Shown here one piece after another: positions 27,787 to 46,628 of a stretch of DNA of 64,000 nt. The stretch is from assembly GCF_963676685.1 (NCBI RefSeq), contig NC_092355.1, positions 24,552,001 through 24,616,000 on the forward strand, written 5' to 3'. The translations under genes were made by a program, and so were the position numbers. The stretch's first letter is position 1, and each line of letters begins with the position of its first letter. This DNA comes from Mytilus edulis. Its lineage: Eukaryota. A model generated the notes under the pieces. It worked only from the letters and a program-made list of their open reading frames with translations, did no database searches and was not told the origin of the DNA.

Positions 27787-28995
27787 TTACGTTAATTGTT
27801 CACTAAAATCCCACGGCTTTACTAAATCATCTGATTTGTGATTTTTTTTATGCTCAAAGCACCGGTATTCTTCAGTTAATAAATCGTCAATTGTGTTTCG
27901 TTGGATTGAAAAATCTCCATCGTAACATGTGAATGTTTTTATATAAGATATATGTAGGCTATAGCGGTTTTGTAGTGTTTCAACGACTCGAAATAGTTCT
28001 GATCCCAAATTTCCGTAAGTTTTTTTTGACATTCGTGAATGCCATACTTGAAGAGCTATTGTATTATGTCCTTTACATACTACAAGTTGTTCACAACGAG
28101 ACAAATCCAAATCAAATACACCAACCTGGCGATATAATGCATTTCGTTTGCTTCGACATTCTTTATCGATTATATAACTTACATTATACTTTTTGACGTA
28201 CCAGGCAATAATATGGTTGAAAAAGGCGGGAGGAAGAAATTTAAATTCTAAACATAACCAACTGGTTTTGTTAATTGATTGACTTCCATCCGAAAAGTGC
28301 TTCTGAACTTCAGAGAAAGAGCATGCCTTTATCATACATGGCATGTATAATGTTGTTGAATCTTTTAAGTTCACAATAATATCAAATCGTTTCATTACTT
28401 CGATTAAATGTGCTTTGTTGTTTTCAAATTTCAAATTAGGTTCTTTCCGGAACAGACTAGATATAAGCGAATCTGTTAATTGTCCGGTGTCTTTCAATTG
28501 TTGCCAATCATCTGAAACTTCTATAACATTATCAATTTTATCACTAACAAGACATCGAAAGGCCTTTATCAACCATTTCGGGTTCAGAATAACATGATCA
28601 GCTAAGTTTTCTTCATCAAAGTAAATAACTGTTCCATTGTCGTTACAGTATTTCAAACATCGTTTGACTTCATTTTCTTCGCTAATACCAATATCGTCAT
28701 GTTTTGCAATTTTTAGCAATGTTTTAGTAGATGAAATTGGTACATTGTTGTCTCTCAGCTTTAATAAAACTTGTTGAAATAATAGCCATTTTAAGGGACA
28801 GATTTTGCCCCAATCTTCCATTTCCATAGCTTGACGATAAATTTCTTTTCGAATCTCTTCAAACACAATGTCAGCATCTTCAGTATTAGAAATAAAATAA
28901 ATGTTTCTCAAATGTTTTTTCTTCTCCTGGTCTTTCAGAACTTGTCCTAAATTGTCTTTAAATTGTCTTTGTCGTTTTTTTCGCTCTGAAGGTTC
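27787..28995 (-). CDS. ROCO terminal exon: end of Roc and COR domain
   Basis: ttgaag|GAA acceptor; YFISN (G5), WGKICPLKWLLFQ, CLKYCNDNGTVIYF, VILNPKWLIKAFRCLV, MKRFDII, YMPCM are typical COR motifs; 403 codons to TAA. Confidence 0.92.
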   Translation of the reverse strand, partial: EPSERKKRQRQFKDNLGQVLKDQEKKKHLRNIYFISNTEDADIVFEEIRKEIYRQAMEMEDWGKICPLKWLLFQQVLLKLRDNNVPISSTKTLLKIAKHDDIGISEENEVKRCLKYCNDNGTVIYFDEENLADHVILNPKWLIKAFRCLVSDKIDNVIEVSDDWQQLKDTGQLTDSLISSLFRKEPNLKFENNKAHLIEVMKRFDIIVNLKDSTTLYMPCMIKACSFSEVQKHFSDGSQSINKTSWLCLEFKFLPPAFFNHIIAWYVKKYNVSYIIDKECRSKRNALYRQVGVFDLDLSRCEQLVVCKGHNTIALQVWHSRMSKKTYGNLGSELFRVVETLQNRYSLHISYIKTFTCYDGDFSIQRNTIDDLLTEEYRCFEHKKNHKSDDLVKPWDFSEQLT

Positions 28996-31900
28996 CTTCA
29001 ACACATTAAAAGAAATAACTGTTTCAACAAAGGGACACACAGATGGACAAAGAACATTAGTGAAAATAAAAAAAACAATGAAGGCCGTAGATTGACATAT
29101 AATGGTGTACCTTTTTTTAAAATTGTTATTTGGATGGAAAGTTGTTTCATTGGCACCCACACCACATCTTCCTATATCTAATGACACAAAAAAATAAGGC
29201 ATAATTGGGAGTAACAAACATACCGTTTGTAGGTAACCATTTCGAAGTAAAAAAATGAAATACAACGACTTCACCACTGGTGCCACTTCCACTCTTACTG
29301 ATTTTTTTATCGTTTTATGTTGTTTATAAAAGTATCTGTCTAATTTCAAATTATAGATTCTTATTTGTCCTTGTAGCGTTTTACTAGTTAAGGAGACTCG
29401 CGGGTATAAGATTTTCAGAAAAAAAATAAACTTTAATCTTTCATTACAAATTTCATTAATTACCTTTAGTAGTTGTTACTTTATCATATGGTACAAACAT
29501 CACTCCAAAAAATCAATTTGTGTGACTTTCAAAATATAGATATCATTGAAAAAACTCTAAATTATCTCCCTTTGGTGCAAAAATGCCATTTTTTGGCATT
29601 CAAATTGAAATATCTTTTTTAACTCATCGGTGACCAAATTTCTTTTTTGTTGTTTTCGAATAAGTTGTACATAAACTTAATAATTGTATAATAAAAGCGA
29701 TTTCTGTAATTTTGTTCTTTTTTTATTTCGATATTACCGCTTTTTCTCTTATTAGTTCAACAGAAAAAAAGGACATAAACATAAATGTATGCTTCTTTCG
29801 AAGGAAGATTGTGAGCGTAAATGAACGGTGACGTCAATTTTGTATTTCATTTTTCTATTAAGTATAAGATAAAGTTCATTTATAGAAAAATATAGAGATA
29901 TCCTATATTAATTTTTTTTTAAATAATTTAGACCCGCGAGCCCCCTTAAGTTGGAAAATAATATTGTTTATAGGAATAAACATGTGTACCTTAAAACGAT
30001 CTTCGTTTGTACATACAACAATGATTGGAGGGTCTAGTCTGCCTTTCTTTGTAGTCGACCAGTAGCAGTGAATGGCGTCAAACCAGAAACAGACATACTC
30101 TATCAATTATTTGAAAGTATAAAATGGTCAATATGAATAACACAATAAATTTACTTTAGGAACCATAAAAATGTGTGTTCAACATATTTGAAGTACATAC
30201 TTCGCAACACATGTACAACATGTCATTAACAAACCTGACAACCTAAAGCAGGATTATTCCAAACAATATCTTGAGAACAAATTTGGTTTATATGTTCATC
30301 TAAAACACAAGTCGCCGAAAAAATTACCTGAAAAAACTATGTAATATCTTTTGTGTATACATATGACATCCAAACAAATTCAATGCTCTCTTTTTCCTGC
30401 CATGAATTTAGTTTTAACTATGTTTGATATTTAACAATATAACACAACGGTAGGTTTCACAAATAGCAATGTCTATCTGACTGTTACAAATATGTGTTAC
30501 TTTATTCAGAGGGGAAAAGGTTTCAAAACTCATGTTGGTACAATATATCACGGTAGCTTAACTATTACAAGTACCAAATGTATGATAGAGGTTTTGCTAT
30601 GAGGTTTTCGCACTGTGCATACTTATTCTATCAGAACAATTAATTTGTAGTTGTAGATTTCTTTCTGTCCCGTCATCATGGAAGAATTTAGAAGCATAAC
30701 ATCTTGACGAATAAATTTTTATGTCAGTTTTTCAATTGTAGAACTTACCTGCCGAGCCTTCAAAATCTAGCCCTTGGTTTTCAACAGTGCTGAACTCTAA
30801 ACTGTCTGTGACAAGCAAATACACTGCGCATTTTGACAGGAAGACTTGGTGTGTAGCATAAAAATCTTTCTGGCCAGCAAAATCCCACAACCAGCAAAAC
30901 GCTAACATTTCATTCTGTTCCCCTGTCGTAGATTTAAGATATGATTTCATAAGTGTAGAAGTCATTTCGTTTATATGTTCATCGTTAACAGGGTCCGACA
31001 CATTTTCATTTAAGTAGTTGTTAACTGTGTGACCATTCGCCTTTTCTGATTTGACATTGTCTTTTTGGATTTGATTTAAATCAATCTCCACTGCTTCATG
31101 ATTGTCTTTTTTGTCGGGTATATCTGAATGAATATCAGGTATTCTGGAACCTATCAATAAGGTGTCATCACTTTCATTTCTAACGCTGGAAGTATCGTCT
31201 TTTAAGGTATCTTTGTATTCACTATTACTTGCACTTGTAGAAAGTCGTTTGTCTGATGCACGTCTTGATTCATCTGTTTTGGAACTTGAAGGTTCTTGAT
31301 GAATAACAGTTTCGGCTGTGGCGTTCAGGAGCTTATCTTTATACACTTGATGTATCAATCTAGTTAGATCGTCGTCTGTCTCTGTTAGCATATAAAAAAT
31401 GAGATAAATAAACAGATAACCAACAGGTTAATATACTTTATTTTGTTGACACGAAGAAGATATCCAATGCATATATTTGCTGTTTGGTTAATATTGATGT
31501 TTAGATTATATTCCGTTGTTTTTGTATAATTTGATTTTTGTTGTAACCCGTTTTCTGATTGGCGGAAGTTGTTTTGTTATCAGCTCATACACAAAAATTT
31601 GTTATGTGAACGTGACATCATTAACGTTTTTTTTCATGATTTACTGTTTTAAAATGGAATTGAAATCAAGTATCACTGATGCAGGGGCTACGTTAAATAT
31701 GAATATATGAACTAAGTACATGTATACCTCCCATAAGAATGGTGCTTGTTTAAATGTCCCTCATATTGACAAAATTCAGGTAGCAAGACAAACAGACTTA
31801 GTTGAGATCTTTTAGCTATATAAACATACATAACACACATACGACACAACTGATTCGGAGATGCAAAACTTTACGAAAAATCTGATACAGACAGTTTGGA

Positions 31901-34900
31901 AGACGTCAACAAAAATAGTGTAGTAATAAGTACATACAGAAAGTAAAACATAATTACAAATGCGCTTTCTATAAAAAGTTTAAATTGAGTAACATATAAA
32001 GTAACGGGTGTAATGCAATCACCCGCATCGATTGCGAGATCCATACAACAAAAAGGAACTAAACATGTGTTCTATAAGTATTAACCGACTGTTAACTTTC
32101 ACTTGAAACCATCATTTCTAAGTATATATTAAATAGTGTGATAATTACAGCTGTGACCATGGTGATTAAAAACTTTTCAGTTTTAAATGTATACTATTTT
32201 CAACATGGTCAAGTATGTTTTGTTAAGGCCTAATTTGCTGGTTGTACATTTACACAGTCTATCCGAAAAATTTTGTTAAAAATTTTGCTCAAATCGGTGC
32301 TAGAGGTAATTCTTAACTTACAGTAATGTGAAAGTGTGGGTTTTTTCTTCTTGTAAGACTCACTGTGACTTTGAACTCATGTACTCGTTTAGTGTCAAAG
32401 TGGGATACCCCGTTTCTTTTGTTTATATAATCTTTAATATTACAAAGGCAAACCCAGAGAAAACTGTACAGTAGGTAAACATGATAAACACCAGGACCAA
32501 GAAAATATAGCTTAAGACAGTCCTTTAACATCTATGACTTTACACATTGTTTGTATATAATTCAATGACTTCTTGTACATGTGGTTACTAGAAGCTCTTG
32601 TATATCATATCAGTTGATGAACCTATGCTCCTTGCACGAGGGATTGCACGAGGGACATTTGGTTATTAGTGTTCAACTCAAAACAATTGATAATTTGAAA
32701 ATAAGAAATTTCTAGTTTGTAGTAGAGATTATGGTACTGAGATGACGGATATGGTCAAATTGGATAATTATGACTGAAAAGATGCAGAGTAAGCAGCATA
32801 TTTTGAATCTTCGTCTTACCTTCGGGAAGGTATTATTGGAATTATTCAGACAAAATCGTTTTTTTATCCATATAATTAATATATCAGTATGTGAGATTAA
32901 ATTATCCAGCTTTGTTGATCTTTTGTTTATAAATGAGTCTGATAGAATTTCTTCCCATATCAAAATTAGAAAAGGTCTGCAACGCGAGGCAACGAATTTC
33001 AATGGTTTATCGACAGTTTGCTGGAAAATTCTCCAACCAAAATCAACGAATATTTTGCATGTTATATCTACGAGAAACTATATCATTTAAATCACGTGTT
33101 TGTTGGTAGAGACAAGTTTTGTAAGGTATCTCTTCAGATAGGATTTTTCAATCGTTTATAGTGGTGTAAAAGGTATTCACGTCAGTGGTAACCGTGGAGT
33201 TTTTCAGAGAATGAAAAAGATACAAAATTATCAAGAGTTTCATTTCAGTTCTTAAAAATCAACATGTAGTTGATGTCATTGTGCGAGTTAATAGTATCAG
33301 AGTTTTATCTAATAATGTATCAATGCATTCATTCTTACAGGCTTTAGATGTACTATGCCATGGAAAATTCCGAAAGAACAGGTGTCATGTCAAGGTCATA
33401 CAGATGACATTTGAACTTTATATGAAGAGATACGACCAAAACATGAAAAAGAAACCGACTGCAATTAAACCCTATTTTATTGCTGATTAACCGAAGGTTA
33501 TTTTCTAAGTAGAATATGTAATATGAATTATACTCATTACGAGTTAAGTTTGTTATAATTCTCTAGTTGGATATAACCTAGAGATAGATATAGAGGCCAA
33601 TTTCATGAATGTCTTCAATTAGAAACTATCAAATATGCATTAGTCAGCACTGTATTATAAAATTGTCATACATAAACCAATCATACACAGCATACGATAG
33701 TATGTTGTTCGGATTCAACATTTTAAATAGTAGCTTTATTTTAAAATAAATGAAATCATCACAATTTAAATGTCGTTTACTAAAAGCACATCTTAACACA
33801 ATAATTTCTTTTAATTTCCAACGTGATTGCAAAATTTTACACTTAACCGACTTTTTATGACTTAGTCACTGGATCATTTTAAAAGAAGGTGAAAATCCAA
33901 ATTAGATTAACAGCACCCCGATCAACTGAAAACACAAGAAAATATGCAACAGTCGTCAAAACACAAAAACAAACCTACCGATTTGAAAACTAATAAATGA
34001 TATCATAAATTTTAAAGTATAACATATCACGATTTTTTAACGGCCTCAGGACATATAAATGACGAAATTATTCCTTATAAGGACATTATTGACATTAAAA
34101 TTTGTCTTGTATCATATAATTGTGGCGTCATAAGAAGCATAGAGTACCGAAGTCCTTACATCTTTCTTAAAGAAAAAGCCTTCGATAAACCGAACGCTCG
34201 CCAAAGTGTTCAATCCCGCCAAATGTTTACCCTGCTTGTCAGAAGCTTATATTCCAGTTCGTGTCGTTGGGTGCTGTTTTGATTTTTATTGTTTTGGTTT
34301 GAATTGAAGCACATTTTTGCATGTCGTCTCTTTTAATAGCTGTCTATGCGGTATCTATATTCTGATTGATGAAAACTTTACGATGAAAAATAACAGCTTA
34401 CTTTGTTTCATTCATACTGTGTTGGATTGCTGTTTTTATGACAGCTAAACATGTACCCTATCTCTTTGTGTATACCGAGTGGTAATATGAAAATGAAGTG
34501 GATGAACCATTAATGTCAAAGATCATAATAGAAAAATAAAATTACATAATTGAACGGTTTAGACAGGTGATAAGACAAACATTTTAATAAAAAAAAAACA
34601 TTATCGAGTGTTAGATGTATTAAACAAAAACTTAACAGAACACTTAAAACCAATTTTAAAAAGAAATTGTGTGACTAGTCCTGTGAAAAGTCTCATGAAG
34701 ATATTAAAAATATTGGATATAATTAGTTTGTTTTATATATCTTTAAAATTTAGAATGGAAATGGGGAATGTGCCAAAGAGACAACAATCCGACCATAGAA
34801 AAAAAAAACACAGCAGAAGGTCACCAACAGGTCTTCAATGTAGCTTTGTTTGCATTAAACGTGAATTCATTCCCTTAAGTTCTTCTAATGCTGGCCTAGA

Positions 34901-37900
34901 ATTGATTCCTTGTACTCGAATTTGAACCGTTTTTAAAAGTAGGTTTCATTCGCTCTGCAAGCGTCTAAATATACGTGAAGAGGAGAACAAACACGACTTA
35001 ACATATTTTAAAGTGATGCGAGAATGAAACGCAATATCGAAAACAAATATTCATCTGACAATCCTTTTCATGCTTTAAATCGAATGATTAAAACTTAAAA
35101 CTGAACAAACAAATACCGTCTTACCATTACATGGGCTCCATTTCCCATCAGCGATATTTATATTGCATTTCTCAACTTCAATACCGTCTGTACTCTGTGT
35201 AGAAGTGACATCTTCCTTGTTGTGCCACAGTAATCTTTTCATTAAACTGGTTTTTCCTACTCCGTTTTTTCCAATAAAAACAAGTCTTGCAAAATGAAGT
35301 TTTCCACATTCACCTTTTAGGAAAAGTTCGTGTATAAACTTTTGTGTTTCATCATCTAATTGAAAAAAGACAAAAAAACAAATACATTTTCTATTAGTTC
35401 AAAAAATGTACATTTTGTTTTTTGCAATTTGGCGCTGTTCGGTTCATATCATACATGTCCTCTAGACATTATATTGTCAGGATTTGTTTTCTTGACTTTC
35501 ATTTTTGCTTTATATATACTTGTTATTTTTGGTGGGGTTTTTTGTTAACATATTAGTTGGAGTTTTTTTGTTGTTTTATTTGTAATTAAGATTATAACAC
35601 AATTTTGACTTTTTCACATATTTTCTGCTTGTTTAGTTGACACATTCTTTTAAATATAATAGAATTTTACGCGACTGTCATTCAAATGAGATATTCAACT
35701 AGCTATAAAAAAACAGGTTTAATTCTCCATTTTCTACACAACGAAATGCCTGTAAAAGTCAGGAATATGACATTTGTTTTACATTCGTTAAGTATATTTG
35801 AACCTTTTATTTCTGTCATTTGATAAGGGATTGCCCATTTTGAATTTCACTTGGAGTAATTTTGCTGTTTAGTCTAATGATAGTGATTTACTTCATTGTA
35901 TATTCTAACAAAATAAATATTCATTAACACTTTAACATACCTGTCGTTTTATTTCCATTTATTTGCGTTGATATGTCTTCTGCAACTATATATAGAGATA
36001 TCTGCTCAGTAACGGTATGTTAGATAACGTGTCTCAAAACATATTTTGTCTAACAAATGATTATACAAATAAGTAGATGTGGTATACTTGTCATTCAACC
36101 AAAGTTCAACTCAAATTGATGCAAGCAGCCATAAGCCGTACTACCTTTAATAATCACAGAACACCATACCGTATTTCATCTATAAAAAGCCCCAACATAA
36201 ATAACGCTATACAATTCAATTGAAAATAATAGCTTAATTGATAACAATGCATTCTACCTAAAACAAATAGGACAGATATGAACTAACGCCAACCATAGAA
36301 CTGTATGCTCCTGACTTTGGTCAGAAACATAGACAATGTGGCGATGTTAAACATATTTGAAGGCGCAAATCCTTCCTCTAAACTGCGATTGTAATTTAAC
36401 GGCAAATTATAAGAACAAAAATGCTCATTGAATAGATATAGGAAGATGTGGTGTGAGTGCCAATGAGACAACTCTCCATACAAATAACAATTTAAAAAGT
36501 AAACCATTATAGGTTAAAGTACGGCCTTCAACACGGAGCCTTGGCTCACACAAGCTATAAAGGGCCCCAAAATTACTAGTGTAAAACCATTCAAACGGGA
36601 AAACCAACGGTTTGTTTACATACCTGTCGTTTTATTTTCATTAGTTTGTATGGACACGTCATCTGCAATTACATATATGATTGATGTATTATCTCATAAC
36701 ATATTTTGTTCTGCAAATTAATTTTTGTTAGAAGATAAAGATTATTTAAAATAAATATAGTAATATTGACGAAATTCCTTATCAAAGATATTTTGAATCA
36801 AACAGTACTTACCGTTTGACTAATTGGATCGTTTAACTTTTATTCGAGTTAGCATTACCAAAATGGATGCCCAACATTTGAATTTGATCTAAACTGTGTA
36901 TTATGTATTGTGTACTGCTGCGCTGGTAAAGTCCTGCTATTGTTCTAATAAAATTGTCAAAGAATCTCATATGAGGATTTATATATACATGTATATATGA
37001 AAAAAAAAGTACGCGTTTTTCTTATAATGTTTCTAAGTCTAATGCTTTTAATGAACTTCGTCTTATATTCTAAACAATGAAGAATCGGAGATATTTTACT
37101 TACCTTTCGTTTCATTTCCATCAGTTTTTCTGGATTTTTCACCTGTAACTATATATAGAGATATGGTAAACATGTGGATCAATGCAAACATTATCTAACA
37201 GATAAGTTTGATCTAGAAGACAGATTAGTTAAAAACAAACTCATTTATAATAGGTGGTGGACCAAAGTCGGAATAATAAAAAAAATCGTCAAAAATACTA
37301 CACGGCTATATCATACATCATTCGAAAATATGTGTACTTTGCAATTAGTTTGAGGGACAAAGATCAGGATCAAGGACAGAAATATTATTGATTGATTGTT
37401 GGTTGCTTTACGCCGCATTAGCACAAAAAAGCTATATCGCGGCGAGAAAGAAATATGACAGTTGTTGTCCATTCGTTTGATGTGTTTTATCATTTGATTT
37501 CGCCATTTGATTAGTGACTTTTGAATTTTGAGTTCAGTATTTTTGTGATTTCACTTTTTTCATTGGCATGAAAGAGACGTCTCGTTGCATAATAAATAAC
37601 GTACTGCATCTTTATACTGATATAGACATCGGCATCGTTGTGTTTTGCATAAAAATAATTATAAAAATAAATCTTGAAAAAATTAGTGTAGCTACTATTA
37701 CCAAACACTTACGTTTTACTCCGTTTTACATTGAAGATTATGTGAACATTGTAAATATTGGTTTGAGATACAGGATACCTTCTTGTGAATTTTTGGTTAT
37801 AAAGTGCAGTTTATATCCTAATTTGATAAAGATTATATACTATCATGTACTAATTCATGTTATTTGCTAATATTCAGGATACATTGCCTCATGACAATTA

Positions 37901-40900
37901 TAATGTGGCTTGAGAAATTTATCAAATCCCTTTAACTGAACCTGTCTTTACTTCATATATTGTTCATATTTGTTTTCTTTTGTTTAGAAATTAGTCATGA
38001 TGATACACGGAATATCATATTTACTGAATTGACACAAACAGGAAATATGTGCTCTCTACAAATAGATAAACTTTTTATTATGGATACAAATTTCATTCTC
38101 CAGGTTATTGTGTGCGTGTAAAAAGTGTTTGAAGAATCAAATGAATGCTATATCTGCCTATTTGACCCATTTTTCTTCTTTTCTTCTTTAAGTTAGGTGT
38201 CTTCGTAATACTAGTAGAAAAGCGGAGCTTACCAAAGTCGCCATCCGTAAACAACATTTTCACAGCAAAGACAAAACAAACTGAAAAATGGGAACAGTTC
38301 AATTTATCATTAGATTGTATTGCTCCTGCTCGTAATTTTATATAAGTTCATTGTTCATTCAAAGTAATGACTCCTAACAATATGAATTATGTTTAACGAC
38401 AAAATTATTAAATCCAGTTTGCGAAAACAAAATAAGTGATTATAGAAGAATACTATATAACATGTAACTTCTTTACTCGTTCTAGATATGTTACAAATGT
38501 ACGAAAATTCTGTCTTAAATCAAATCTGATATTCAAAACAAAAACACATTTTAACAAAATATTTGACTCTCTTCGTTTTGATAAAAGATTCTTTTCTTTT
38601 TAATAATCAAATATTATTTTATTATTATATTTATTTCAAGATCATTCAGCTTACTTAGAGTATTATTACCAGTAAAATATGTGTATTGGAACACATCTAC
38701 TCAATGATTCTTAATTATATAACAAAGAAAAGGCTTCAGCAAGCTACATCAATCAGGCCTTTTTAGCTTTAAAGGTACTGTGGATTCATTTATTTTCGTG
38801 GGTACCAATTTTTGTTGTTTGAAGAAAACTTGCATATTCTTGGATATTTAATTTCGTGGTTTTTGACAAAGTCTGCCTACATTCCTTAAGAAAATTTCTA
38901 ATTCGTTGAACATTTAAATTCGTGGTTCTCCTGTATCCACGAAATCCACGAAAATTGGTATCCAACGAATATTAAGGAATTCACAGTATTGAATGTATTG
39001 TAGTCGATTCGTATGATGTTTTTTTTTAAATTACCTAGCGTGTATAATTTGTTAGAATACTTTTCCATAAGCAGCTTTGTCTTTGTTGAAGGCCAAACTG
39101 TTTCCATACTTTATTTTATCCTCGGAAAATTTTGGTGAATAGATGTTTCAATGGCACACCTCCTTATTTCTAAAATCAGTTTTTGTGTGTGTTATATATA
39201 TATATATATATCACAATCATTTAAAAAATATAATGAAAATTTTGCTAGTTTTCGCAGTATACTGTATACTTACCAACTATACTAGCAATGATGATATATG
39301 TAACGTGATGAGCATAGGATTTGCCTAAAATGATAATTTAAACATGTCATTTTTTTAAAATAAAATTCAATCTCTATAGACTTTAAGTGCCATGCAAAAT
39401 GTTTTTGTACTACGTCGAGAATAAGGCAGTTGTTTTCAATTCGTTTGATGTGTTTTGTTTGAACTTTTGAATTTGCTGTTTGTATTGGTTTTATTAAATG
39501 AAGAATGGCGTCTGAACGTCATAATCAAACGTTGAATATGAAAAAAGAAAATAAAACTCAAGGTTAATGCAGTTTTTTTATGCCGTGTAAGACGTAAATT
39601 ATTTGATACCAAACATGTTTAGAAAGTGCCCAATTGATAGGAACTGAAAGGTGTGAAAAGTATTTCATTCTGATCCCTTTTCAAAGAGTCTAACCGTCAT
39701 TAATATTTCAGTGACTTTGTCAAATGCAAAAGACAATTGGAAAACAAAGCATACTAGAATATACTTATCGGGGCCTATTATAGCTGACTATGCGATATGG
39801 GCTTTGCTCATTGTTGAAGGCCGTACGGTGACCTATAGTTGTTAATGTCTGCGTCTTTTCGGTCTTTTGTAATAGTTGTCTCATTGGCAATCATACCACA
39901 TCTTCTTTTTTATATTTACTTTAAGTTTTATTTGTTTGTTTTACTTGTGATGAAGATTATAACACAATATCGACTGCAGTATCCGTATATTACACTTGTT
40001 AACCTATTAAATCTGTTTGTTTTGGTCACAAATAGTTGTCCATATTATTAAATTTGATGCGACAGTTATACAAGTGAGAGGTTTAGCTTTAAAAACAGGT
40101 TTAACTCCCCATTTCTACATAAGAAAATGCATATACCAAGTCAGGAATATGAATATGCGCTGTTGATTCTGTCAGTGTATTAGGAAATTTCCTTTTTGAA
40201 TTTTCCTATTTTTTTGGTGATTTTAGTTTTGACAAGTTTTTTCAAAATAATTTTATTCTTAAATGCTCACTTTTTATTTTGCTTTCAATTAAATGAGCTG
40301 TATAATCATATGTGCTATATGGTCTGAAAAAGAGACATGTTTGTACTTCTAAACATTTACTCAATTGCATATATGAAAAAAAAATCAACAATTCAATTAT
40401 CATTGTAAATTGTCTTCATGCTTTACTCACATTTAATGATATTTTTATATTTCATTATACCACACTTATATGTATTTACCGCATATTTCTAAAAGTGTTT
40501 TTTTGTTTCCGCTGTAACGATTTAACATGATTAAGGTTATATACAGAAAAAAGGGTCTATATTACTGATTTTGGTAACAGTTTATATTCTTAAAGGAAAG
40601 AGTATTAAATCTACAAAAATGTGTTCAATATGTTTAAAATCCCCATTTTCAATTCCATAGATTTTCTTGTTAAATAAATGTTTATATTATATATTCCCAG
40701 CTTTAAAACCAATTTCAGCCGACTGTATTTGCTTTCTTAACAGTTTTCACCTATTGTAAATATTAAAAAAAAAAACATAGAACAATATCCGATCAGAACT
40801 ACAAATAAAACATCATAACTAAATACATGAATATTGGATGTACAAATTCCGAGACACTTCTAATTTCAATGGAAATTCACACTCAGCAAAAAATATTAGA

Positions 40901-43900
40901 CGACGTTGATGGTACACTACAGTCTAAGACGCGGTAAAAATGTCGTGAGTGTTAGGAAAAAGAAACATATATATATATAGATTAATAATCAGAAAATAGC
41001 CAGAAGCCACCAATGGGTCTTCAACATAGCGCAAAAATCTCGCATTCTGAAACGGGCTTCAACTAACCCTTAAAACAATAATGTTTATAACACTTTAGTG
41101 AATTAAGACATCAAACTCAACTCCGAAACATATAAATAAAACAAAAATAAAGCTAAATTCTAATATGACTTGCTTCTTTCGCTTTGTAAACAACACCGTG
41201 ATAAAATTCTCGATATATCTTTACTCAGCACAGCCTCAGAGATAAACATAATAATGGGTGTTACAAGATACCTCCCACGGAAATCCACATGAATTGGAAG
41301 CACTTTGCAAACGTTTTCCCGATTTTATTGGATAAAAAATTGCAAAAAAAGAGATTTTTTAAATTTTTTATTCGGATGCATCTTCAAAGAATTAGTGCAC
41401 AAGAGCTCGGAAAATCAACAAATTCAATATAAAGTAAATTTAGGTCAAAGTCTATTAATGTTTTTGCGCATTTAAGTCATTTCAAAACAGGACGTCCTAC
41501 TCTGTACAAATGAAAACAGTGGTGTTGAAGGTTTTCCTTGACGTGAATCAACGAAATTCGTAGAACACTGTATTAAAATGGAGTTTTGAGGTACTTTTTT
41601 TTCTATTCTATTGCATTTTTAGAATATTTACTTATTTCTGCAAATCAAAATGGCAGCTTCCTAGTTACGAAATGTCAAAATTTGGCTTTGACTGTAGCTT
41701 ACAAGAAAAATGTGTAATTAAAATTGGCAAATGTTGGGTTTGAGAATTAAAAGAATTATACAGATTTTTTCAAGCGTCTGTTCACAATATAATCTATGCA
41801 AGTTTCATATGTATTAGAATGTTTGGGCTTTATTTAATAAGGAGTAAAAGATAACAGCCACATACACGGCATATCCTCTCTCGCTTCAGTATTTAAATGA
41901 CCGTATTTGTCCTATTATAATCGCTATTATAAGTGGAAGCCGTTGAATTTACACATGACCTTGTTAGTGATATTTGTTAATTCTTTTCCTCGCTAACGCT
42001 CGTGATAAAAATATCACGGCCAAGACCATGTGTAAATTTTCTAACAAATATATGGCTTCCATGAATTGTTTCTTAAACATACAATACTAACAAAGACAAG
42101 AGTCTTTGAACAGGCACAAACATGCAGCCGGATAAACATGCTTTGTGAGATCACAACCCTCACCTCATAACTCTATCCATTTTTTTTTGGTATATTATGA
42201 GGCGAAGTGTTTTACTTATGAACCTATTTTATGATAAACTGTTATCACAGACATACGACTCTTTTTTTGTTATTTCGATAATGCAAATGTTGAAAATAAA
42301 ATAGCAACAGTTCAACATTTAAGTTTTGCAAATATTCAGGATCATTGAACCATGAATGAAGGTATCAATTGAAATGTGATGTGCCAATGTTAATACAACT
42401 GCATACCAAATACCATTGAATTATCATAAGAAGTTCCCTTTAAACAAACCTAAACACAAACTAATACATGTTAACTAAGCAATATTTCGAAGTCAATTAA
42501 CCATATATGAGCGGGCGGGCTCAAATATTCTCCATGGTAATAAGATATGCTAAATATATTACAACTGCATACCAAAAATCATTGGCATACCAGTAGTGTC
42601 TCCCCGTGTCATAAACCTCCCTAATCAAAAACTCATACATGAAAAACTTAGCAGAAGTTTTAAAGTTAAAAGACCATGACTGTGGGGGCGATGCAAAATA
42701 ATCTCCATGAAAATGAAATAAATCAATGCTAATACAACTGCATGCCAATTATCGTTAACCTATCACTAATGGTTCCCCATAAACTGATCTAATCACAAAC
42801 CAATACATGAAAATCAAGCAAAAATTTCAAAGTCAATAGACCTTGACTGAAGAGGCAGGCCAAATAATCTCCATGGAAATGAGATATGCCAACACTTATA
42901 CATCTGCATACCAATTATCATTAACTTGTATTAGTTGTTCCCCACAAACTAACCTTATCACAAACTAATACATGATAATTAAGCAAAAGTTTCAAAGTCA
43001 ATAGAGCATAACTAAGGGAGTGGACCAAATAATCTCCATGGTAATGAGATGTGCCAAATATATTACAACTGCATACCAAATATCTCTGACTTACCCCTAG
43101 TGGTTTACCATAAACTAGACATAATCGGAAACCAATACATTGTTGACGCCGTAGCCATCGCCGGAATCAACATACCTATGTCTCGCTTTTTGACTCCGTC
43201 AAGCGAGACAAAAATCAGACGGTTGGTTACTTTTAGTACGAAATTTGCTTTACAACCTGACATCTCATTTGGCTTTGTTATTTTGTACGAAAATGCAAAT
43301 GTTGTTTGCAAAGTGAGAATTTACAGACACTAAATGATTGTGCAAGTTTTAATTGTTTTAAATGCAATATCATATTTTTTTTATAATATTTTTCATAAGA
43401 GTGGTAAATTTCCTTTTAAAGTAAAAATATATTGATTAAGTCACATTTTGAATAAGTCACATTTTGTGTTTCAAATTCTGAAAACTTATAATATTCTACT
43501 GACAAAGTAATATACTATGCAAGAATCATACAATAAGACAAACAGTTAATATATGTGCATTAACAAAATACATAAACACAAACCAAAAGACTGATTGATG
43601 CGAGCAAATAATCAGGTGTAGCTACATGTATTAACCATCTTTTGATATTTTCCTTTCGTTCGAAGTGATATTAAAAATATGAAGCAAATACATGTACATT
43701 TGTTAAAATCTTTAAAAACAGATCTAAACCAATTTCATATCTTAGAGGATAGAAATTCAAGCAAAGATCTAACTTACCTGTCAGACAGTATTTCCTGGCA
43801 TGTTGAATTCGCCATTATCTCCCCGTCAGTGACGCATTGATAATCTAGGAAGATAAATCTATTTATTTAAATTTAATAAAACTCATCATATATATCTATA

Positions 43901-46628
43901 TCTACATATACCCGAAATTCCGAAGGATTTCGCCATAAAAGGTTATGTAACCTATGAAACCTTATAGTAGTTTATGTCATGATTGGTTCTAGGTTTACAT
44001 TAAAAGTTAAATCCCAAATAAACTGACTTCTGAGTAAAATTCAAAACGTAAAGCCCCTAATCGAATGGCTAAATCAATTGATAAAACACATCAAACAGAT
44101 GGACAATAGCTGTCATATTTCTGACTTGGTACAGACATTTTCAAGTATACAAAATGGTGAATTGAACCTGGTTTTATAGCGCTAGACCTCTCACTTGTAT
44201 TGCATTCGCATCACACTTTATCATATTTACAAGGATGCGTGAACAAAACAGACATAATCGGTAAAATTGTCAAAATAGGGATACCGCAGTCATCACTGCA
44301 TTATAACCTCAATTAGAACAAAAACAGACAAATTTAGAAAGGGGACAACATTTTTCAGAATTAAAATTTCGTGGTATTTGCTTCTCTTCGACGTTGATGG
44401 TCGGTTATTGATCGATATGTATAATTGTGCCTTGACAATTAATGAAACAAATATAGGCAACTTGTATCGGCTGTCTTATTGCTGAAATTATTAAAATAAT
44501 AGCTTTTACATGTTTTATATTCCTTGACAACAGAAGATTTAAAACAAATAAAATAAACCAACAATAAGCTATTAGCAATAATCTTTTCTATTTGTTTGAG
44601 TTAGAAGTTTTATATAAAGGTAACATATCTAAGAAAACAACGCAATGTACATACTTTGGTTTTTTGATAACTGTATGTATCGACATCTTATTTCTTTAAT
44701 AAAAACTCACCTGCAGACAGTTTTGTACACGGAACTCTAAAACATGAACAATCTTCCTCAGATGGGTTACAGACACATCTGTTCTTTGGTTTTGCAACAA
44801 ACGCATACTGCTTTGTGTAGTCACAGCGACAAGTAACATCGTTGCTAGAAGAATCATTCCTGAATACTACCTGTCCCTCGTCAGAACACTTTGATTTACT
44901 AAAGATACATTCACTATTCCCATGGGTGGTGAACACTATAGGTTGGTATCTTCCGGCATTACATTCTGCTAGATTAAACAACGGTTGGAACACAAGCTTG
45001 CTTCCTTTAAATGAAAAACGAACTTGAAATATTATAGTATACGTACAGTCGACGATTCTTGTTTATTTGTTAGGTTTTTTATATTCATTGAAACAACATA
45101 AGCTATATATTGTAGTTCGTACTTACAAGAGCAGTACAACGGGTGCCACATGTTGATCAGCAGTCTCGAATTTTGGCGAGGTTTATGTTGATCATGATTA
45201 GTCTAGAACATGGAGATGGTAATTTAAAACTTGATTCAGATATTTTAACATGCTATGTATAGATTACACTTAGATTATACTGTACTATTGTCTATGTATA
45301 TGACAATATTTTATGTATATGATGTTAAACGAGCCTAAAAAACCTTATGAAAATTCTAACATACACATGTACAACTCAGGTATCTTTGATGAAATTATCT
45401 CATCTTCATGATAATCCGTTGTAGACTATTCGATACATTGCCAAAAATATTGTTTAATTTCAGAAGACACCTGACCCATAATCACTTCAGCATCAAGTGA
45501 ATAAATTCTAGTATCAGTTTTACCTATGCTACTTTGATCTGAACCTGAACAATTTTCCATATATTTCTGTTCCAGTATGTTGTCTAAACATACATATTTG
45601 TCCTCCGAATAACATGAAACGTTTGCTTTCAATCTCCATTCTGCTTTTGCTGGACATTTTAAGTCATATCCGATTGCCGGGCCATTAATCTGAAAGAGAT
45701 AATAATGAACTATTTCCTTTATTTCAAACTTTGTTGGCAATATTTGGTTTTCTTTAATATGTCATTATTCAAGTTGTCTTCTTTAACAGGTTTTTTAGTC
45801 AGAATATATCACTGACAAATTAAAGTAACATATACACACTCATTAAGGAAATGATCTTCTTTTATGATGTAATTGAGTATTTAGTTTAGACTTGCGCAGT
45901 GGTATAAAAAGTCAACTGGTGACACTGGAGATCACGGCTCGTTAAAGATCAAAGTTTGCATTTAGTTATGATTTGACTATACATTTAAAATATGTTCTAT
46001 TTGTAAATTGTATTAATTGATGGTAGATAATCAGATATGTCCGAATGAACAGTATTGTGTATTGGCTGTACTGTTACGGTACTGTATCGGCCTACACGAA
46101 CTCGGATGTATTTGAACAAAGGTATTCAATATAAAAAAAGATCCACTTTTACTAAGGTGTTTATATATGTTATGTATCCATTATACTTGTTGCATTTATT
46201 TTTACTAGCGATGACTATTACATGATACTAATTTCAGACTTGTAAAACAATATATCTAATCAAGTATACTAGTGAGAACATTATACGGTAAAAGGGCAAC
46301 TGTTACCTGATATATACATACTGTAAAGAAATTTATTTCAGCGGATACTTTATTTCGCGTGATACCAAGTCTACTCCATTTCGCTGCTTTAAAAATTGGC
46401 GATTATCTTATTTACATGATGTGGATTAATTAAATTTACTCATTCGCGACGATTTATATGTGCCTTATTTTTCTACTCGCGATAGTGGCGAAAATAAATC
46501 GCTCGCGAAAATAAGTTGGTCTACAGTATATTTTGACTATGCATTTAGAGAAAGGGGTAAAACAGTTTACCTGTGAAAATTCTTATCACATAAATGTCTA
46601 TATTTACCAGCATTAGGAGAAAAATCAT
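27787..46628 (-). CDS. Multi-exon ROCO-family (Roc-COR) GTPase with N-terminal signal peptide and Cys-rich ectodomain; putative single-pass receptor
   Basis: Phase-compatible GT-AG exons: 46628-46608, 45689-45524, 45004-44711, 43844-43778; then uncertain 40511-40480, 39324-39274, 37817-37779; then 37142-37104, 36662-36624, 35979-35941, 35355-35125, 31381-30749, 30099-29990, 28995-27787. The Roc-COR part is secure; its linkage to the ectodomain is inferred. Confidence 0.7.
29392..29945. mobile_element. TTAA-specific MITE (Kolobok-like) in a ROCO intron
   Basis: TIRs GGAGACTCGCGGGT / ACCCGCGAGCCCCC, flanked by TTAA on both sides (29388-29391, 29946-29949). Confidence 0.8.
29990..30099 (-). CDS. 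ROCO exon (Roc G4 region)
   Basis: EYVCFWFDAIHCY...DPPIIVVCTNED; phase 1 to 0. Confidence 0.9.
30749..31381 (-). CDS. ROCO exon (low-complexity insert plus Roc switch II)
   Basis: LWDFAGQKDFYATHQVFLSKCAVYLLV; phase 1 to 1. Confidence 0.92.
35125..35355 (-). CDS. ROCO exon (Roc P-loop and switch I); absent from the ORF track
   Basis: caattag|..ARLVFIGKNGVGKTSLMKRLL...STDGIEVEKC...W..|gtaaga; 231 nt, phase 1 to 1. Confidence 0.92.
35941..35979 (-). CDS. 39-nt linker micro-exon 3 of the ROCO gene
   Basis: ttgcag|..DISTQINGNKTT..|gtatgt. Confidence 0.75.
36433..36612. mobile_element. Interspersed repeat fragment (probable retroelement 3' tail)
   Basis: gaagatgtggtgtgagtgccaatgagacaactctcca; inverted homologues at ~15925-16150, 29090-29180 and 39770-39910. 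Confidence 0.6.
36624..36662 (-). CDS. 39-nt linker micro-exon 2 of the ROCO gene
   Basis: ttgcag|..DVSIQTNENKTT..|gtatgt. Confidence 0.75.
37104..37142 (-). CDS. 39-nt linker micro-exon 1 of the ROCO gene
   Basis: ttacag|..EKSRKTDGNETK..|gtaagt. Confidence 0.75.
38778..38986. mobile_element. MITE with TA target site
   Basis: TA|CTGTGGATTCATTTATTTTCGTGGGTACCAATTTT...AAAATTGGTATCCAACGAATATTAAGGAATTCACAG|TA inverted termini. Confidence 0.8.
39274..39324 (-). CDS. Candidate hydrophobic (partial transmembrane) exon of the ROCO gene
   Basis: cattttag|..KSYAHHVTYIIIASIV..|gtaagt; only the phase-1 frame is open. Confidence 0.5.
42330..43213 (+). mobile_element. HINE/pearl-like element with internal ~170-bp tandem repeats
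   Basis: 4-5 diverged units containing caactgcataccaaa; terminal hairpin tgtctcgcttt...aagcgagaca followed by an A-run. Confidence 0.65.
43778..43844 (-). CDS. ROCO gene ectodomain exon 4
   Basis: ttcctag|DYQCVTDGEIMANSTCQEILSD|gtaagt; phase 1 to 2. Confidence 0.8.
44711..45004 (-). CDS. Cys-rich ectodomain exon 3 (10 Cys)
   Basis: GSKLVFQP...ECNAGRYQP...ECIFSKSKCSDEGQ...DVTCRCDY...CVCNPSEEDCSCFRVPC; 294 nt, phase 1 to 1. Confidence 0.88.
45524..45689 (-). CDS. Cys-rich ectodomain exon 2 (4 Cys)
   Basis: tttcag|INGPAIGYDLKCPAKAEWRLKANVSC...YVCL...ENC..|gtaaaa; phase 0 to 1. Confidence 0.85.
46321..46526. mobile_element. MITE with TA target site
   Basis: TA|CTGTAAAGAAATTTATTTCAGCG...CGCGAAAATAAGTTGGTCTACAG|TA imperfect TIRs. 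Confidence 0.7.
46608..46628 (-). CDS. Probable first coding exon (signal peptide MIFLLML)
   Basis: aaaATG ATT TTT CTC CTA ATG CTG|gtaaat; phase 0 joins exon 2 to give MIFLLMLINGPAIG-YDLKC. Confidence 0.65.

What the first reader, a model, noticed from the sequence alone, without database searches (positions are those of the whole stretch)
27787..46628. Receptor-type ROCO: signal peptide and 16-Cys ectodomain apparently spliced to a Roc-COR GTPase with no LRR or kinase
Seen in sequence: four phase-compatible 5' exons encode a signal-like peptide and a Cys-rich region (C..EGQ.......D..CRC spacing, loosely TNFR-like). A hydrophobic exon, small linker exons and an intact Roc (GKNGVGKTS, STDGIEV, WDFAGQ) plus COR follow on the same strand. 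I found no separate start exon for the Roc half. Established knowledge: the characterised animal ROCOs (LRRK1/2, DAPK1, MFHAS1) are cytosolic and Roc-COR modules signal through dimerisation. Inference: this may be a cell-surface receptor whose ligand-driven clustering directly switches a GTPase, plausibly in bivalve innate immunity. I do not know of a functional description of this architecture.
Basis: partly seen in the sequence, partly recalled or inferred. Interest (0 to 1): 0.85.

Follow-up and report, generated by a model that had tools for sequence, protein, structure and literature searches.

The report
Membrane-anchored Roc-COR GTPase receptor of mussels
This mussel gene really does join a signal peptide, a cysteine-rich outer domain and one membrane helix to a bare Roc-COR GTPase, is transcribed, and belongs to a family of at least 29 such genes that nobody has studied.

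Summary
On the minus strand of 27787-46628 I find one 14-exon gene. Every intron is GT..AG, all phases fit, and the frame is open for 1003 codons.

The product reads, in order:
- a 14-residue signal-like leader;
- an ectodomain of about 170 residues with 16 Cys and four N-x-S/T sequons;
- one hydrophobic helix, split over two small exons;
- three tandem mini-exons;
- a Roc domain with intact G1-G4 motifs and an insert of about 150-175 residues between the switches;
- COR-A/COR-B, then the stop.

There is no LRR, kinase, death or TIR domain.

Evidence for one transcript:
- Contigs of four RNA-like runs carry the joints X|Y and Y|Roc.
- Those contigs cover the small exons and leave the unique intron bins empty.
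- The RefSeq model of the Mytilus galloprovincialis counterpart is collinear exon for exon.
- For 29 of the 45 best COR exons in this Mytilus edulis genome, the Cys-rich exon lies 11-52 kb upstream on the same strand.
- 62 database models from five Mytilus species show the same fusion.

Not established: the TNFR likeness of the ectodomain, the topology, and any ligand-driven switching or immune role. No paper on this architecture was found. The scan noted a similar "receptor Roco" elsewhere in this genome (s1-838794).

The parts
46608..46628 (-). Exon 1: ATG plus the first 7 residues (MIFLLML) of the signal-like leader. Phase-0 GT donor at 46607-46606.
   Evidence: Read. It matches the N-termini MIFILIL / MIFLLIL of P0153, P0162 and P0157.
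45524..45689 (-). Exon 2: the end of the leader (..NGPAIG|YDLKCP, small residues at -3 and -1) and the first 4-Cys part of the ectodomain, with one N-x-S sequon.
   Evidence: AG/GT and phase 0 to 1. Conserved as protein in paralogs D, E, G and H. dN/dS is 0.17-0.33.
44711..45004 (-). Exon 3: the 10-Cys core module of the ectodomain (97 whole codons).
   Evidence: At least 150 copies in this genome, all open. All 10 Cys are invariant or nearly invariant in 31 copies. dN/dS is 0.18-0.42. No Pfam, PDB or fold match.
43778..43844 (-). Exon 4: the last 2-Cys piece of the ectodomain (DYQCVTDGEIMANSTCQEILSD), phase 1 to 2.
   Evidence: Read. Conserved in paralogs D and E. Present in P0153.
40271..40323 (-). 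Exon 5: the extracellular stalk just outside the membrane (RPYSTYDYTAHLIESKIKS), phase 2 to 1.
   Evidence: Read. The RNA-contig bin 40260-40459 is covered in X1, X2 and X6, while the next bin is empty. Present in P0153.
39274..39324 (-). Exon 6: first half of the membrane helix (..HHVTYIIIASIV), phase 1 to 1.
   Evidence: Read. Conserved in paralog D. RNA depth is present in its bin. Kyte-Doolittle 19-residue peak of 2.61 at residues 211-229, the only peak in the protein.
38233..38280 (-). Exon 7: second half of the membrane helix and its cytosolic end (VCFVFAVKMLFTDGDF), phase 1 to 1.
   Evidence: Read. RNA depth is present in its bins. Its homologue is in P0153.
37104..37148 (-). Mini-exon W (VTGEKSRKTDGNETK): first of three tandem, phase 1-1 exons just inside the membrane.
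   Evidence: Read. The depth in bin 37060-37259 matches the depth of the joints in X1, X2 and X6. Its homologue is in P0153.
36624..36662 (-). Mini-exon X (DDVSIQTNENKTT), phase 1-1.
   Evidence: Joint 36624|35985 occurs in four runs. A shorter side of 39 letters in X2 and X6 equals the exon's length. Identical in P0153.
35941..35985 (-). Mini-exon Y (VAEDISTQINGNKTT), phase 1-1.
   Evidence: Joints 36624|35985 and 35941|35355, GT..AG on the minus strand, in all four runs.
35125..35355 (-). Roc exon 1: P-loop GKNGVGKTS (G1), switch I STDGIEV (G2) and strand beta-2.
   Evidence: Contigs begin or end exactly at 35355 and 35125. Nearest solved sequences are LRRK2 Roc domains. dN/dS is 0.04-0.31.
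30749..31381 (-). Roc exon 2: an acidic, Ser-rich insert of about 150-175 residues between the switches, then strand beta-3 with WDFAGQ (G3).
   Evidence: Pfam Roc E 9e-9. PDB hits to M. barkeri Roco2, LRRK2 and C. tepidum Roco. In LRRK2 the two matched stretches lie about 8 residues apart. dN/dS of the insert is 0.4-0.7, of the G3 part 0.05-0.11.
29990..30099 (-). Roc exon 3: the G4 motif TNED (T-x-x-D, as THLD in LRRK2, from my own knowledge).
   Evidence: Conserved in all paralogs as TNED / TNKD / TCKD. 100% identical in P0001 and P0153.
27787..28995 (-). Last exon: the end of Roc, COR-A and COR-B, and the stop codon 27789-27787. Nothing follows COR.
   Evidence: Pfam COR-A E 2.7e-15. PDB hits to C. 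tepidum Roco and M. barkeri RocCOR. At least 112 related exons in the genome. 0.75-0.92 of its words are held by 14 RNA-like runs.

Best explanation
Shown: the region is one transcribed 14-exon gene of Mytilus edulis. It encodes a 1003-residue protein made of:
- a short cleavable-looking leader;
- a disulfide-rich ectodomain of about 170 residues with no recognisable relative;
- a single membrane helix;
- about 45 residues from three duplicated mini-exons;
- a Roc GTPase with intact nucleotide-binding motifs and a long, loosely constrained insert between the switches;
- COR-A/COR-B.

It belongs to a Mytilus expansion of at least 29 loci in this genome.

Inferred: it is a type I membrane protein with the Cys-rich part outside the cell and Roc-COR in the cytosol. 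As in other ROCO proteins, the COR domains pair. The ectodomain sets the pairing and thereby the GTP cycle. The output is GTP-dependent recruitment of partners that are still unknown, because the protein has no effector domain of its own. A role in recognising non-self is plausible but untested. It rests on the family's size and on ectodomain and Roc-COR halves whose similarities disagree.
For: - Frame and splice sites: 13 GT..AG introns, all phases fit, no internal stop, a single hydropathy peak, 16 Cys and 4 sequons before it.
- Transcripts: joints 36624|35985 and 35941|35355 in four runs from four studies. The bins holding exons e5, e6, e7 and W are covered, while bins 37660-38059, 39060-39259 and 40460-40659 are empty. 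Contigs stop at the donor 35125 and run on for about 430-515 letters elsewhere.
- No separate start: no in-frame ATG lies between the stop at 36696-36694 and the P-loop.
- Collinear model: P0153 (M. galloprovincialis LOC143055281, 1001 aa) matches every exon, at 88% identity end to end with 2 gaps.
- Linkage: 29 of the 45 best COR exons have the Cys-rich exon 11-52 kb upstream on the same strand. About 0.1 would be expected by chance.
- Database models: 62 models from five Mytilus species hold both halves, 42 of them with a hydrophobic helix in between.
- A 2577-nt assembled contig encodes ectodomain, helix and COR-B in one 524-aa frame (P0039).
- Both halves are under purifying selection.
- Roc and COR are recognised by Pfam and by solved ROCO structures.
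Against: - The joints e1 to e7 of this very gene were not seen directly. One read-laying run of 6 kb was allowed, and it covered 35060-41050.
- No protein model of the window's own gene appeared among the database hits, although paralogs on the same chromosome have models.
- One run (X10) shows only a contig that continues 41 nt past the acceptor of exon X, through an in-frame TGA, and it has no depth on W, e7 or e5.
- This copy's helix has a Lys inside it (..FAVKMLF), and the usual basic residue after the helix is replaced by acidic ones.
- Some paralogs carry I-set Ig domains after the helix, which is odd for a cytosolic segment.
- The mini-exons after the helix carry N-x-T sequons.
- Topology, GTP binding and dimerisation were not measured. 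The homodimer prediction gave no verdict.
Confidence: 0.7

Rival explanations
1. There are two genes. A small secreted or membrane Cys-rich protein ends after the helix, and a separate cytosolic Roc-COR gene starts in the 5 kb before the Roc exon. The fusion exists only in gene models.
For: - The X10 contig runs on past the acceptor of exon X into sequence with an in-frame stop, and shows no depth on the upstream small exons.
- Short models with only the ectodomain exist (P0256, 161 aa; P0257).
- An unspliced read-in before mini-exon W would offer in-frame Met codons.
Against: - In X1, X2 and X6 the small exons have depth matching the Roc joints, and exon X is exactly 39 nt.
- There is no in-frame ATG between the stop at 36696-36694 and the P-loop.
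- Linkage is kept in 29 loci, down to about 33% COR identity.
- The two halves have roughly similar dS towards each paralog, though it differs about twofold towards D.
- RefSeq models in four species join them.
Confidence: 0.07
2. The gene is real, but the Cys-rich part is not an extracellular ligand-binding domain. Either the protein is a tail- or signal-anchored protein of an internal membrane, or the Cys clusters bind metal in the cytosol. In that case the Roc-COR is regulated from inside the cell, as in other ROCOs.
For: - The leader is short, has no basic residue, and was judged by eye only.
- C-x-C pairs occur in the ectodomain.
- I-set Ig domains follow the helix in some paralogs.
- N-x-T sequons sit in the mini-exons after the helix.
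- The ectodomain fold is unresolved.
Against: - The leader ends in a conserved A/T-x-G | Y-D-[LI]-K-C-P site in dozens of models.
- The 16 Cys come without partner His residues, with four sequons, and lie before a single helix.
- All weak fold matches are small extracellular disulfide modules: CCP, TNFR and EGF.
- An internal-membrane location would still leave Roc-COR in the cytosol.
Confidence: 0.15
3. This particular copy is a decaying member of the family: transcribed, but no longer a working receptor.
For: - Exon 7 differs from the allele-like model P0155 at 7 of its last 9 codons, and this puts a Lys in the helix.
- About 2.8 kb in intron 4 is absent from paralogs B and C, and it holds a 165-bp tandem array.
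- No database protein model for this locus appeared.
Against: - All 14 exons are open with intact splice sites.
- dN/dS is well below 1 in every exon.
- Contigs match the window without other letters (X10 record 11).
- The Roc motifs are intact.
Confidence: 0.08

Closest known systems
Animal ROCO proteins (LRRK1/2, DAPK1, MFHAS1)
   Same: A Roc G-domain is followed directly by COR. The nearest solved sequences for both Roc exons are LRRK2 Roc domains. G4 is of the T-x-x-D type.
   Different: These proteins are cytosolic and carry LRR, ankyrin, kinase or death domains. This protein has none of those. It has a leader, an ectodomain and a membrane helix instead, and an insert of about 150-175 residues between the switches.
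Prokaryotic minimal Roco proteins (Chlorobium tepidum Roco, Methanosarcina barkeri Roco2)
   Same: Roc-COR is the core with no kinase. Their COR and RocCOR chains are the solved hits of the COR exon and of the G3 segment. They are the basis for the model of nucleotide-dependent dimerisation (from my own knowledge).
   Different: They are soluble and have N-terminal LRRs. They have no secretory leader, no membrane helix and no Cys-rich module.
Roc-COR joined to putative TLRs and MyD88-like proteins in Aplysia californica (PMC9334734, in silico)
   Same: A mollusc, receptor or adaptor architectures with Roc-COR attached, and a proposed 'GTPase signalling cascade' in immunity.
   Different: Those proteins keep LRR and TIR (or death) domains, so Roc-COR is an add-on to a known signalling module. 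Here Roc-COR is the only cytosolic module and the ectodomain is an orphan.
Receptor-like TRADD-N proteins of Crassostrea virginica (Kaur et al. 2021, PMC8195603)
   Same: A bivalve lineage-specific expansion of proteins with a Cys-rich extracellular domain, one membrane helix and a variable intracellular immune-type module.
   Different: Their intracellular part is DED plus TRADD-N plus death, STAND, HEPN, AIG and other domains. Roc-COR is not among the domains listed in the passage read. Whether the two Cys-rich domains are related was not tested.
Single-pass receptors switched by pairing (receptor kinases, receptor guanylyl cyclases, TNFR superfamily): resemblance in working only
   Same: Leader, ectodomain, one helix, and a cytosolic module whose activity depends on pairing.
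   Different: The cytosolic module is a GTPase with its own dimerisation domain, not a kinase, cyclase or death domain. Membership of the TNFR family is not supported.

Membership tests
ROCO (Roc-COR) proteins | A Ras-like Roc G-domain with G1-G4 motifs | tested here: met
   GKNGVGKTS, STDGIEV, WDFAGQ and TNED were read. Pfam Roc E 9e-9, above its cut-off. LRRK2 and Roco hits in the PDB.
ROCO (Roc-COR) proteins | A COR domain directly C-terminal of Roc in the same polypeptide | tested here: met
   Pfam COR-A E 2.7e-15, 56.9 bits against a cut-off of 35.3. PDB hits to C. tepidum and M. barkeri COR. Phases fit and the collinear P0153 joins the exons.
ROCO (Roc-COR) proteins | GTP binding and hydrolysis, and COR-mediated dimerisation | not testable with these tools
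   The homodimer prediction of the COR exon gave no verdict. These properties need biochemistry.
LRRK / DAPK / MFHAS1 subfamilies | LRR, ankyrin, kinase or death domains beside Roc-COR | tested here: not met
   Pfam on the larger exons and on P0153 finds only Roc, Ras-like and COR-A. The frame stops right after COR.
TNF receptor superfamily (ectodomain) | TNFR-type cysteine-rich repeats (Pfam TNFR_c6) | tested here: not met
   No Pfam hit at E <= 1. The profile of 31 copies finds no TNFR in PDB sequences. TNFR members recur only among non-significant fold hits, E >= 1.8 and Z <= 3.1, on a poor model. The Atlas lead scores 0.78 only.
Type I single-pass membrane receptor | An N-terminal cleavable signal peptide | tested here: inconclusive
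   MIFLLMLINGPAIG|YDLKCP has a hydrophobic core and small residues at -3 and -1, conserved in family models. No signal-peptide predictor was on hand.
Type I single-pass membrane receptor | One membrane-spanning helix between the ecto- and endodomains | tested here: met
   A single Kyte-Doolittle peak of 2.61 at residues 211-229. Peaks of 2.5-3.5 lie at the same place in 42 family models. This is hydropathy only, not a topology predictor.
Bivalve Cys-rich ectodomain / TM / DED / TRADD-N receptors | DED and TRADD-N domains after the helix | tested here: not met
   Only about 45 residues (mini-exons W, X, Y) lie between the helix and Roc. P0153 gives no such Pfam hit.

The most novel reading that the evidence does not exclude
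Mussels have a class of single-pass cell-surface receptors, not so far described in the papers I could search, in which a Roc-COR GTPase is itself the device that signals across the membrane. On this reading, ligand-controlled pairing of the ectodomains sets the pairing of COR and so the GTP cycle. The family has grown to dozens of genes whose ectodomain and GTPase halves are re-assorted between tandem copies, giving a repertoire for recognising microbes or foreign cells.
Probability: 0.35. Interest if true: 0.8.

Novelty: new variant of a known kind. Interest (0 to 1): 0.6.

Why it matters
ROCO proteins, LRRK2 above all, are studied as cytosolic proteins. How membrane recruitment and dimerisation control them is still debated.

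This family offers a natural minimal Roc-COR that is permanently tethered to a membrane behind an extracellular domain. If the topology holds, it would be a simple system for asking whether imposed pairing at a membrane is enough to drive the Roc GTP cycle.

For mussel biology it adds a large receptor-like family to the list of expanded gene families. It is annotated only as 'uncharacterized' so far, and there are signs that ectodomains and signalling halves are exchanged between tandem copies.

Tried and rejected
- The hydrophobic stretch 40818-40750 (SYDVLFVVLIGYCSMFFFLIFTI) has AG/GT sites and phase 2 to 1, and I first took it for the membrane exon. I rejected it because its bin has next to no RNA depth (0, 0.41, 0 and 0 in the four runs), it is absent from P0153, and it could only take the place of exon 5.
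- The donor at 46572 for exon 1 was rejected. It is phase 1, while the conserved acceptor of exon 2 is phase 0.
- AlphaFold on exon 3 with 31 copies gave pLDDT 39. On the 161-aa ectodomain-only protein P0256 with 48 family rows it gave pLDDT 48, with only residues 99-154 above 60. Foldseek and VIA-align then gave nothing significant.
- Neither Atlas search named a relative.
- The homodimer prediction of the COR exon gave no verdict, with score 0.00. It is evidence neither for nor against pairing.
- A search with exon 3 alone returned only single-exon fragments, so it gave no splice evidence and no species outside Mytilus.
- I tried to fetch the DNA downstream of Cys-rich exons in the clusters on C8, C11 and C12 that lack a nearby COR hit.
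- Rfam found nothing in 27000-47500.
- Six paper searches found no study of membrane-anchored ROCOs.

Full report
**What is there**

The gene lies on the minus strand. I located exons in four steps:
- listing open stretches;
- comparing the region with paralogous loci of the same genome at the DNA and protein level;
- reading the splice sites;
- checking against transcript contigs and against the closest database model.

| Exon | Coordinates |
|---|---|
| e1 | 46628-46608 |
| e2 | 45689-45524 |
| e3 | 45004-44711 |
| e4 | 43844-43778 |
| e5 | 40323-40271 |
| e6 | 39324-39274 |
| e7 | 38280-38233 |
| W | 37148-37104 |
| X | 36662-36624 |
| Y | 35985-35941 |
| Roc 1 | 35355-35125 |
| Roc 2 | 31381-30749 |
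| Roc 3 | 30099-29990 |
| last | 28995-27787 |

All 13 introns are GT..AG and all phases fit. The frame is open for 1003 codons from ATG to stop.

**A note on method**

Every database, family, structure and fold search was made exon by exon, by reference, or with proteins that a tool had returned. I built the joined model only inside the sandbox. There I used it to check frame, hydropathy and Cys counts, and to compare it locally with proteins fetched earlier (four, ten).

The only N run of the window (3277-3773) lies outside the finding and was not touched. The single read-laying run stayed under 6,000 letters.

**The product**

- Leader. It reads MIFLLMLINGPAIG|YDLKCP: a hydrophobic core followed by small residues at -3 and -1. 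Dozens of family models share the pattern ..TATG|YD[LI]KCP.
- Ectodomain. Exons e2 to e4 hold 4 + 10 + 2 = 16 Cys and four N-x-S/T sequons. The 10 Cys of exon 3 are invariant or nearly so in 31 genomic copies.
- Membrane helix. The only strong hydropathy peak (2.61 over 19 residues, at 211-229) is IIIASIVVCFVFAVKMLFT. It is split between e6 and e7.
- Mini-exons. W, X and Y are tandem duplicates of 45, 39 and 45 nt, all phase 1-1. Each encodes an acidic Ser/Thr-rich motif ending in N-x-T.
- Roc. It has G1 GKNGVGKTS, G2 STDGIEV, G3 WDFAGQ and G4 TNED.
- Insert. Between the strand after switch I and the strand leading into G3 lies an acidic, Ser-rich stretch of about 150-175 residues. In LRRK2 the same two stretches are about 8 residues apart.
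- COR. COR-A is recognised by Pfam (E 2.7e-15). The COR exon also hits the solved C. tepidum and M. barkeri Roco chains. The frame stops right after COR.
- Other domains. No LRR, kinase, death or TIR domain was found in the exons or in the collinear 1001-aa counterpart.

**Is it one transcript?**

Fourteen runs whose contig totals (32-99 million letters) fit transcriptomes hold 0.75-0.92 of the words of the COR exon. I laid four of them, from four studies, on 35060-41050.

- All four carry the joints 36624|35985 and 35941|35355. Both are GT..AG on the minus strand.
- In X2 and X6 the shorter side of the first joint is 39 letters, exactly exon X.
- Contigs stop at the donor 35125 and continue for about 430-515 letters that are not in the intron.
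- The bins holding e5, e6, e7 and W have depth in X1, X2 and X6. For W that depth agrees with the depth of the joints.
- Bins 37660-38059, 39060-39259 and 40460-40659 are empty.

A DNA run would not show this pattern, so I take these runs as RNA, although the record only guesses so.

Between the in-frame stop at 36696-36694 and the P-loop there is no in-frame ATG. A Roc half starting there therefore could not include its P-loop.

The joints among e1-e7 of this very gene were not seen directly. They rest on phases, on the depth pattern and on homologous models.

**Related sequences**

The assembly is Mytilus edulis. Its contig C6 has the length of the contig that carries XP_071179589.

*Linkage in this genome*
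- The Cys-rich exon 3 has at least 150 open copies in the genome. The COR exon has at least 112.
- For 29 of the 45 best COR exons, a copy of exon 3 lies 11-52 kb upstream on the same strand, down to about 33% COR identity.
- With 150 exons in 1.37 Gb, about 0.1 such pairs would be expected by chance.

*Database models*
- The best database relatives are all from Mytilus: M. edulis, M. galloprovincialis, M. trossulus, M. californianus and M. coruscus.
- P0153 (M. galloprovincialis LOC143055281, 1001 aa) contains every exon of my model in order, including e1, the split helix and W, X and Y. It aligns end to end at 88% identity with 2 gaps.
- Of the 255 proteins collected up to that point, 64 hold exon 3. 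Of those, 62 also hold Roc, and 42 have a hydrophobic helix in between.
- P0001, an older M. edulis model, joins exon 3 straight to the Roc exon. That keeps the frame because the skipped exons together preserve phase 1. It shows how easily the helix is lost from gene models.
- P0039 is a 524-aa frame on a 2577-nt assembled contig. It has the ectodomain, the helix and the C-terminal part of COR, but no Roc. RefSeq P0226 has the same architecture.

**Selection and modularity**

Against five paralogs, dN/dS runs as follows:

| Part | dN/dS |
|---|---|
| exon 2 | 0.17-0.33 |
| exon 3 | 0.18-0.42 |
| Roc core exons | 0.04-0.31 |
| COR | 0.23-0.32 |
| insert between the switches | 0.4-0.7 |

Both halves are therefore coding sequence under constraint. 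The ectodomain as a whole is not under positive selection.

The similarities of the two halves disagree.
- The window, P0155, P0001 and P0153 share 92-100% identity in Roc and COR, but only 71-88% in the ectodomain.
- The ectodomain of P0153 is closest to P0161, P0162 and P0159 (85-87%), whose COR is 75-79% identical to its own.
- P0159 and P0161 share a 98% identical ectodomain but only 75% identical COR.

This points to exchange between tandem copies. The window and two paralogs lie within 200 kb on C12. Mis-joined gene models in tandem arrays could produce part of the same signal.

**The ectodomain**

Nothing names it.
- Pfam is blank at E <= 1.
- A profile of 31 copies finds no relative among PDB sequences.
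- The Atlas gives only unnamed mollusc clusters, plus a TNFR lead at 0.78.
- The two AlphaFold models are poor.
- Fold searches reach only E 0.8 and Z 3.4. The weak rows are all small extracellular disulfide modules: CCP, TNFR and EGF.

I therefore call it an orphan disulfide-rich module. The TNFR likeness is unproven.

**How it most likely works**

Shown: the architecture, transcription, constraint and family structure.

Inferred:
- Type I topology.
- Pairing through COR and coupling of pairing to the GTP cycle, as in the prokaryotic Roco proteins that are its closest solved relatives. This rests on established knowledge of C. tepidum Roco and of G proteins activated by dimerisation, not on a test made here.
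- Control of that pairing by the ectodomain.
- Output by recruitment of unknown partners, since there is no effector domain.

Paralogs add I-set Ig, fibronectin-III, beta-propeller or B-box domains. The window's gene is therefore the minimal form.

Points that do not fit neatly:
- the Lys inside this copy's helix;
- the Ig domains after the helix in some paralogs;
- the N-x-T sequons in the mini-exons;
- the X10 contig that reads through an in-frame stop.

**Comparison and novelty**

It is a member of the ROCO family by both defining domains. It is not a member of the LRRK, DAPK or MFHAS1 subfamilies, nor of the TNFR family.

Two papers come near.
- An in-silico survey of Aplysia notes Roc-COR attached to putative TLRs and MyD88-like proteins (PMC9334734).
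- Kaur et al. describe oyster receptors with a Cys-rich ectodomain, one helix and DED/TRADD-N modules (PMC8195603).

Neither describes a receptor whose only cytosolic module is Roc-COR. Six further searches found none. The held library lacks most subscription journals.

The sequences themselves are public, as 'uncharacterized' or 'COR domain-containing' proteins. I rate the finding a new variant of a known kind.

Other first-stage notes on this genome describe related genes: a 'receptor Roco' with an NHL propeller, a ROCO with death domains, and a Roc split by a long insert. I did not test those.

Noticed in passing
window 40750-40818 (minus strand): An exon-like hydrophobic stretch (SYDVLFVVLIGYCSMFFFLIFTI) has AG and GT sites and a phase that fits after exon 4. 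It is partly conserved in paralogs B, C and H. Its bin has next to no RNA-contig depth, and it is absent from the counterpart's RefSeq model. It is a trap for ab initio reading, or a rarely used alternative exon.
   Followed up: partly
window 36663-36703 (minus strand): In run X10 (another organism label) the only contig across Y and X continues 41 nt upstream of exon X's acceptor without a mismatch. It passes an in-frame TGA at 36696-36694, and the upstream small exons have no depth in that run. This could be a retained or extended exon giving a truncated product, or an alternative start.
   Followed up: partly
window 42371-43140: A tandem array of a 165-bp unit (4.6 copies, 71% matches) lies inside about 2.8 kb of intron 4 (43703-40891) that paralogs B and C lack.
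   Followed up: partly
window 36260-36659, 37260-37659, 38660-39059, 39660-40259: These intron stretches have RNA-contig depths in the hundreds to thousands in all four runs. They show many loose ends and joints between them (for example 37487 to 40188). They are presumably copies of highly transcribed dispersed repeats.
   Followed up: no
P0039 (assembled contig of 2577 nt) and P0226 (M. galloprovincialis LOC143074544): A paralog type has leader, ectodomain, membrane helix and only the C-terminal part of COR, with no Roc domain. It could pair with full-length members.
   Followed up: partly
P0159 against P0161; P0153 against the window's gene: The ectodomain and Roc-COR halves have incongruent similarity. 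One pair is 98% identical in the ectodomain and 75% in COR. Another is 77% in the ectodomain and 92% in COR. This suggests exchange between tandem copies, unless gene models are mis-joined.
   Followed up: partly
P0157, P0166, P0169, P0029, P0088: Some family members carry one to four I-set immunoglobulin domains between the membrane helix and Roc, on the presumed cytosolic side.
   Followed up: no
G000 C8:49.6-50.9 Mb, C8:58.2-59.5 Mb, C8:1.1-2.5 Mb, C11:18.0-18.5 Mb, C12:73.5-76.6 Mb: These are large tandem clusters of the Cys-rich exon with no COR exon scored 10-55 kb downstream. The module may be joined to other intracellular domains there.
   Followed up: no
window 27787-46628: No database protein of the window's own gene appeared among the relatives of P0001, although paralogs on the same chromosome have RefSeq models. 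The closest M. edulis models (P0155, P0001) come from an older assembly and lack exons.
   Followed up: no
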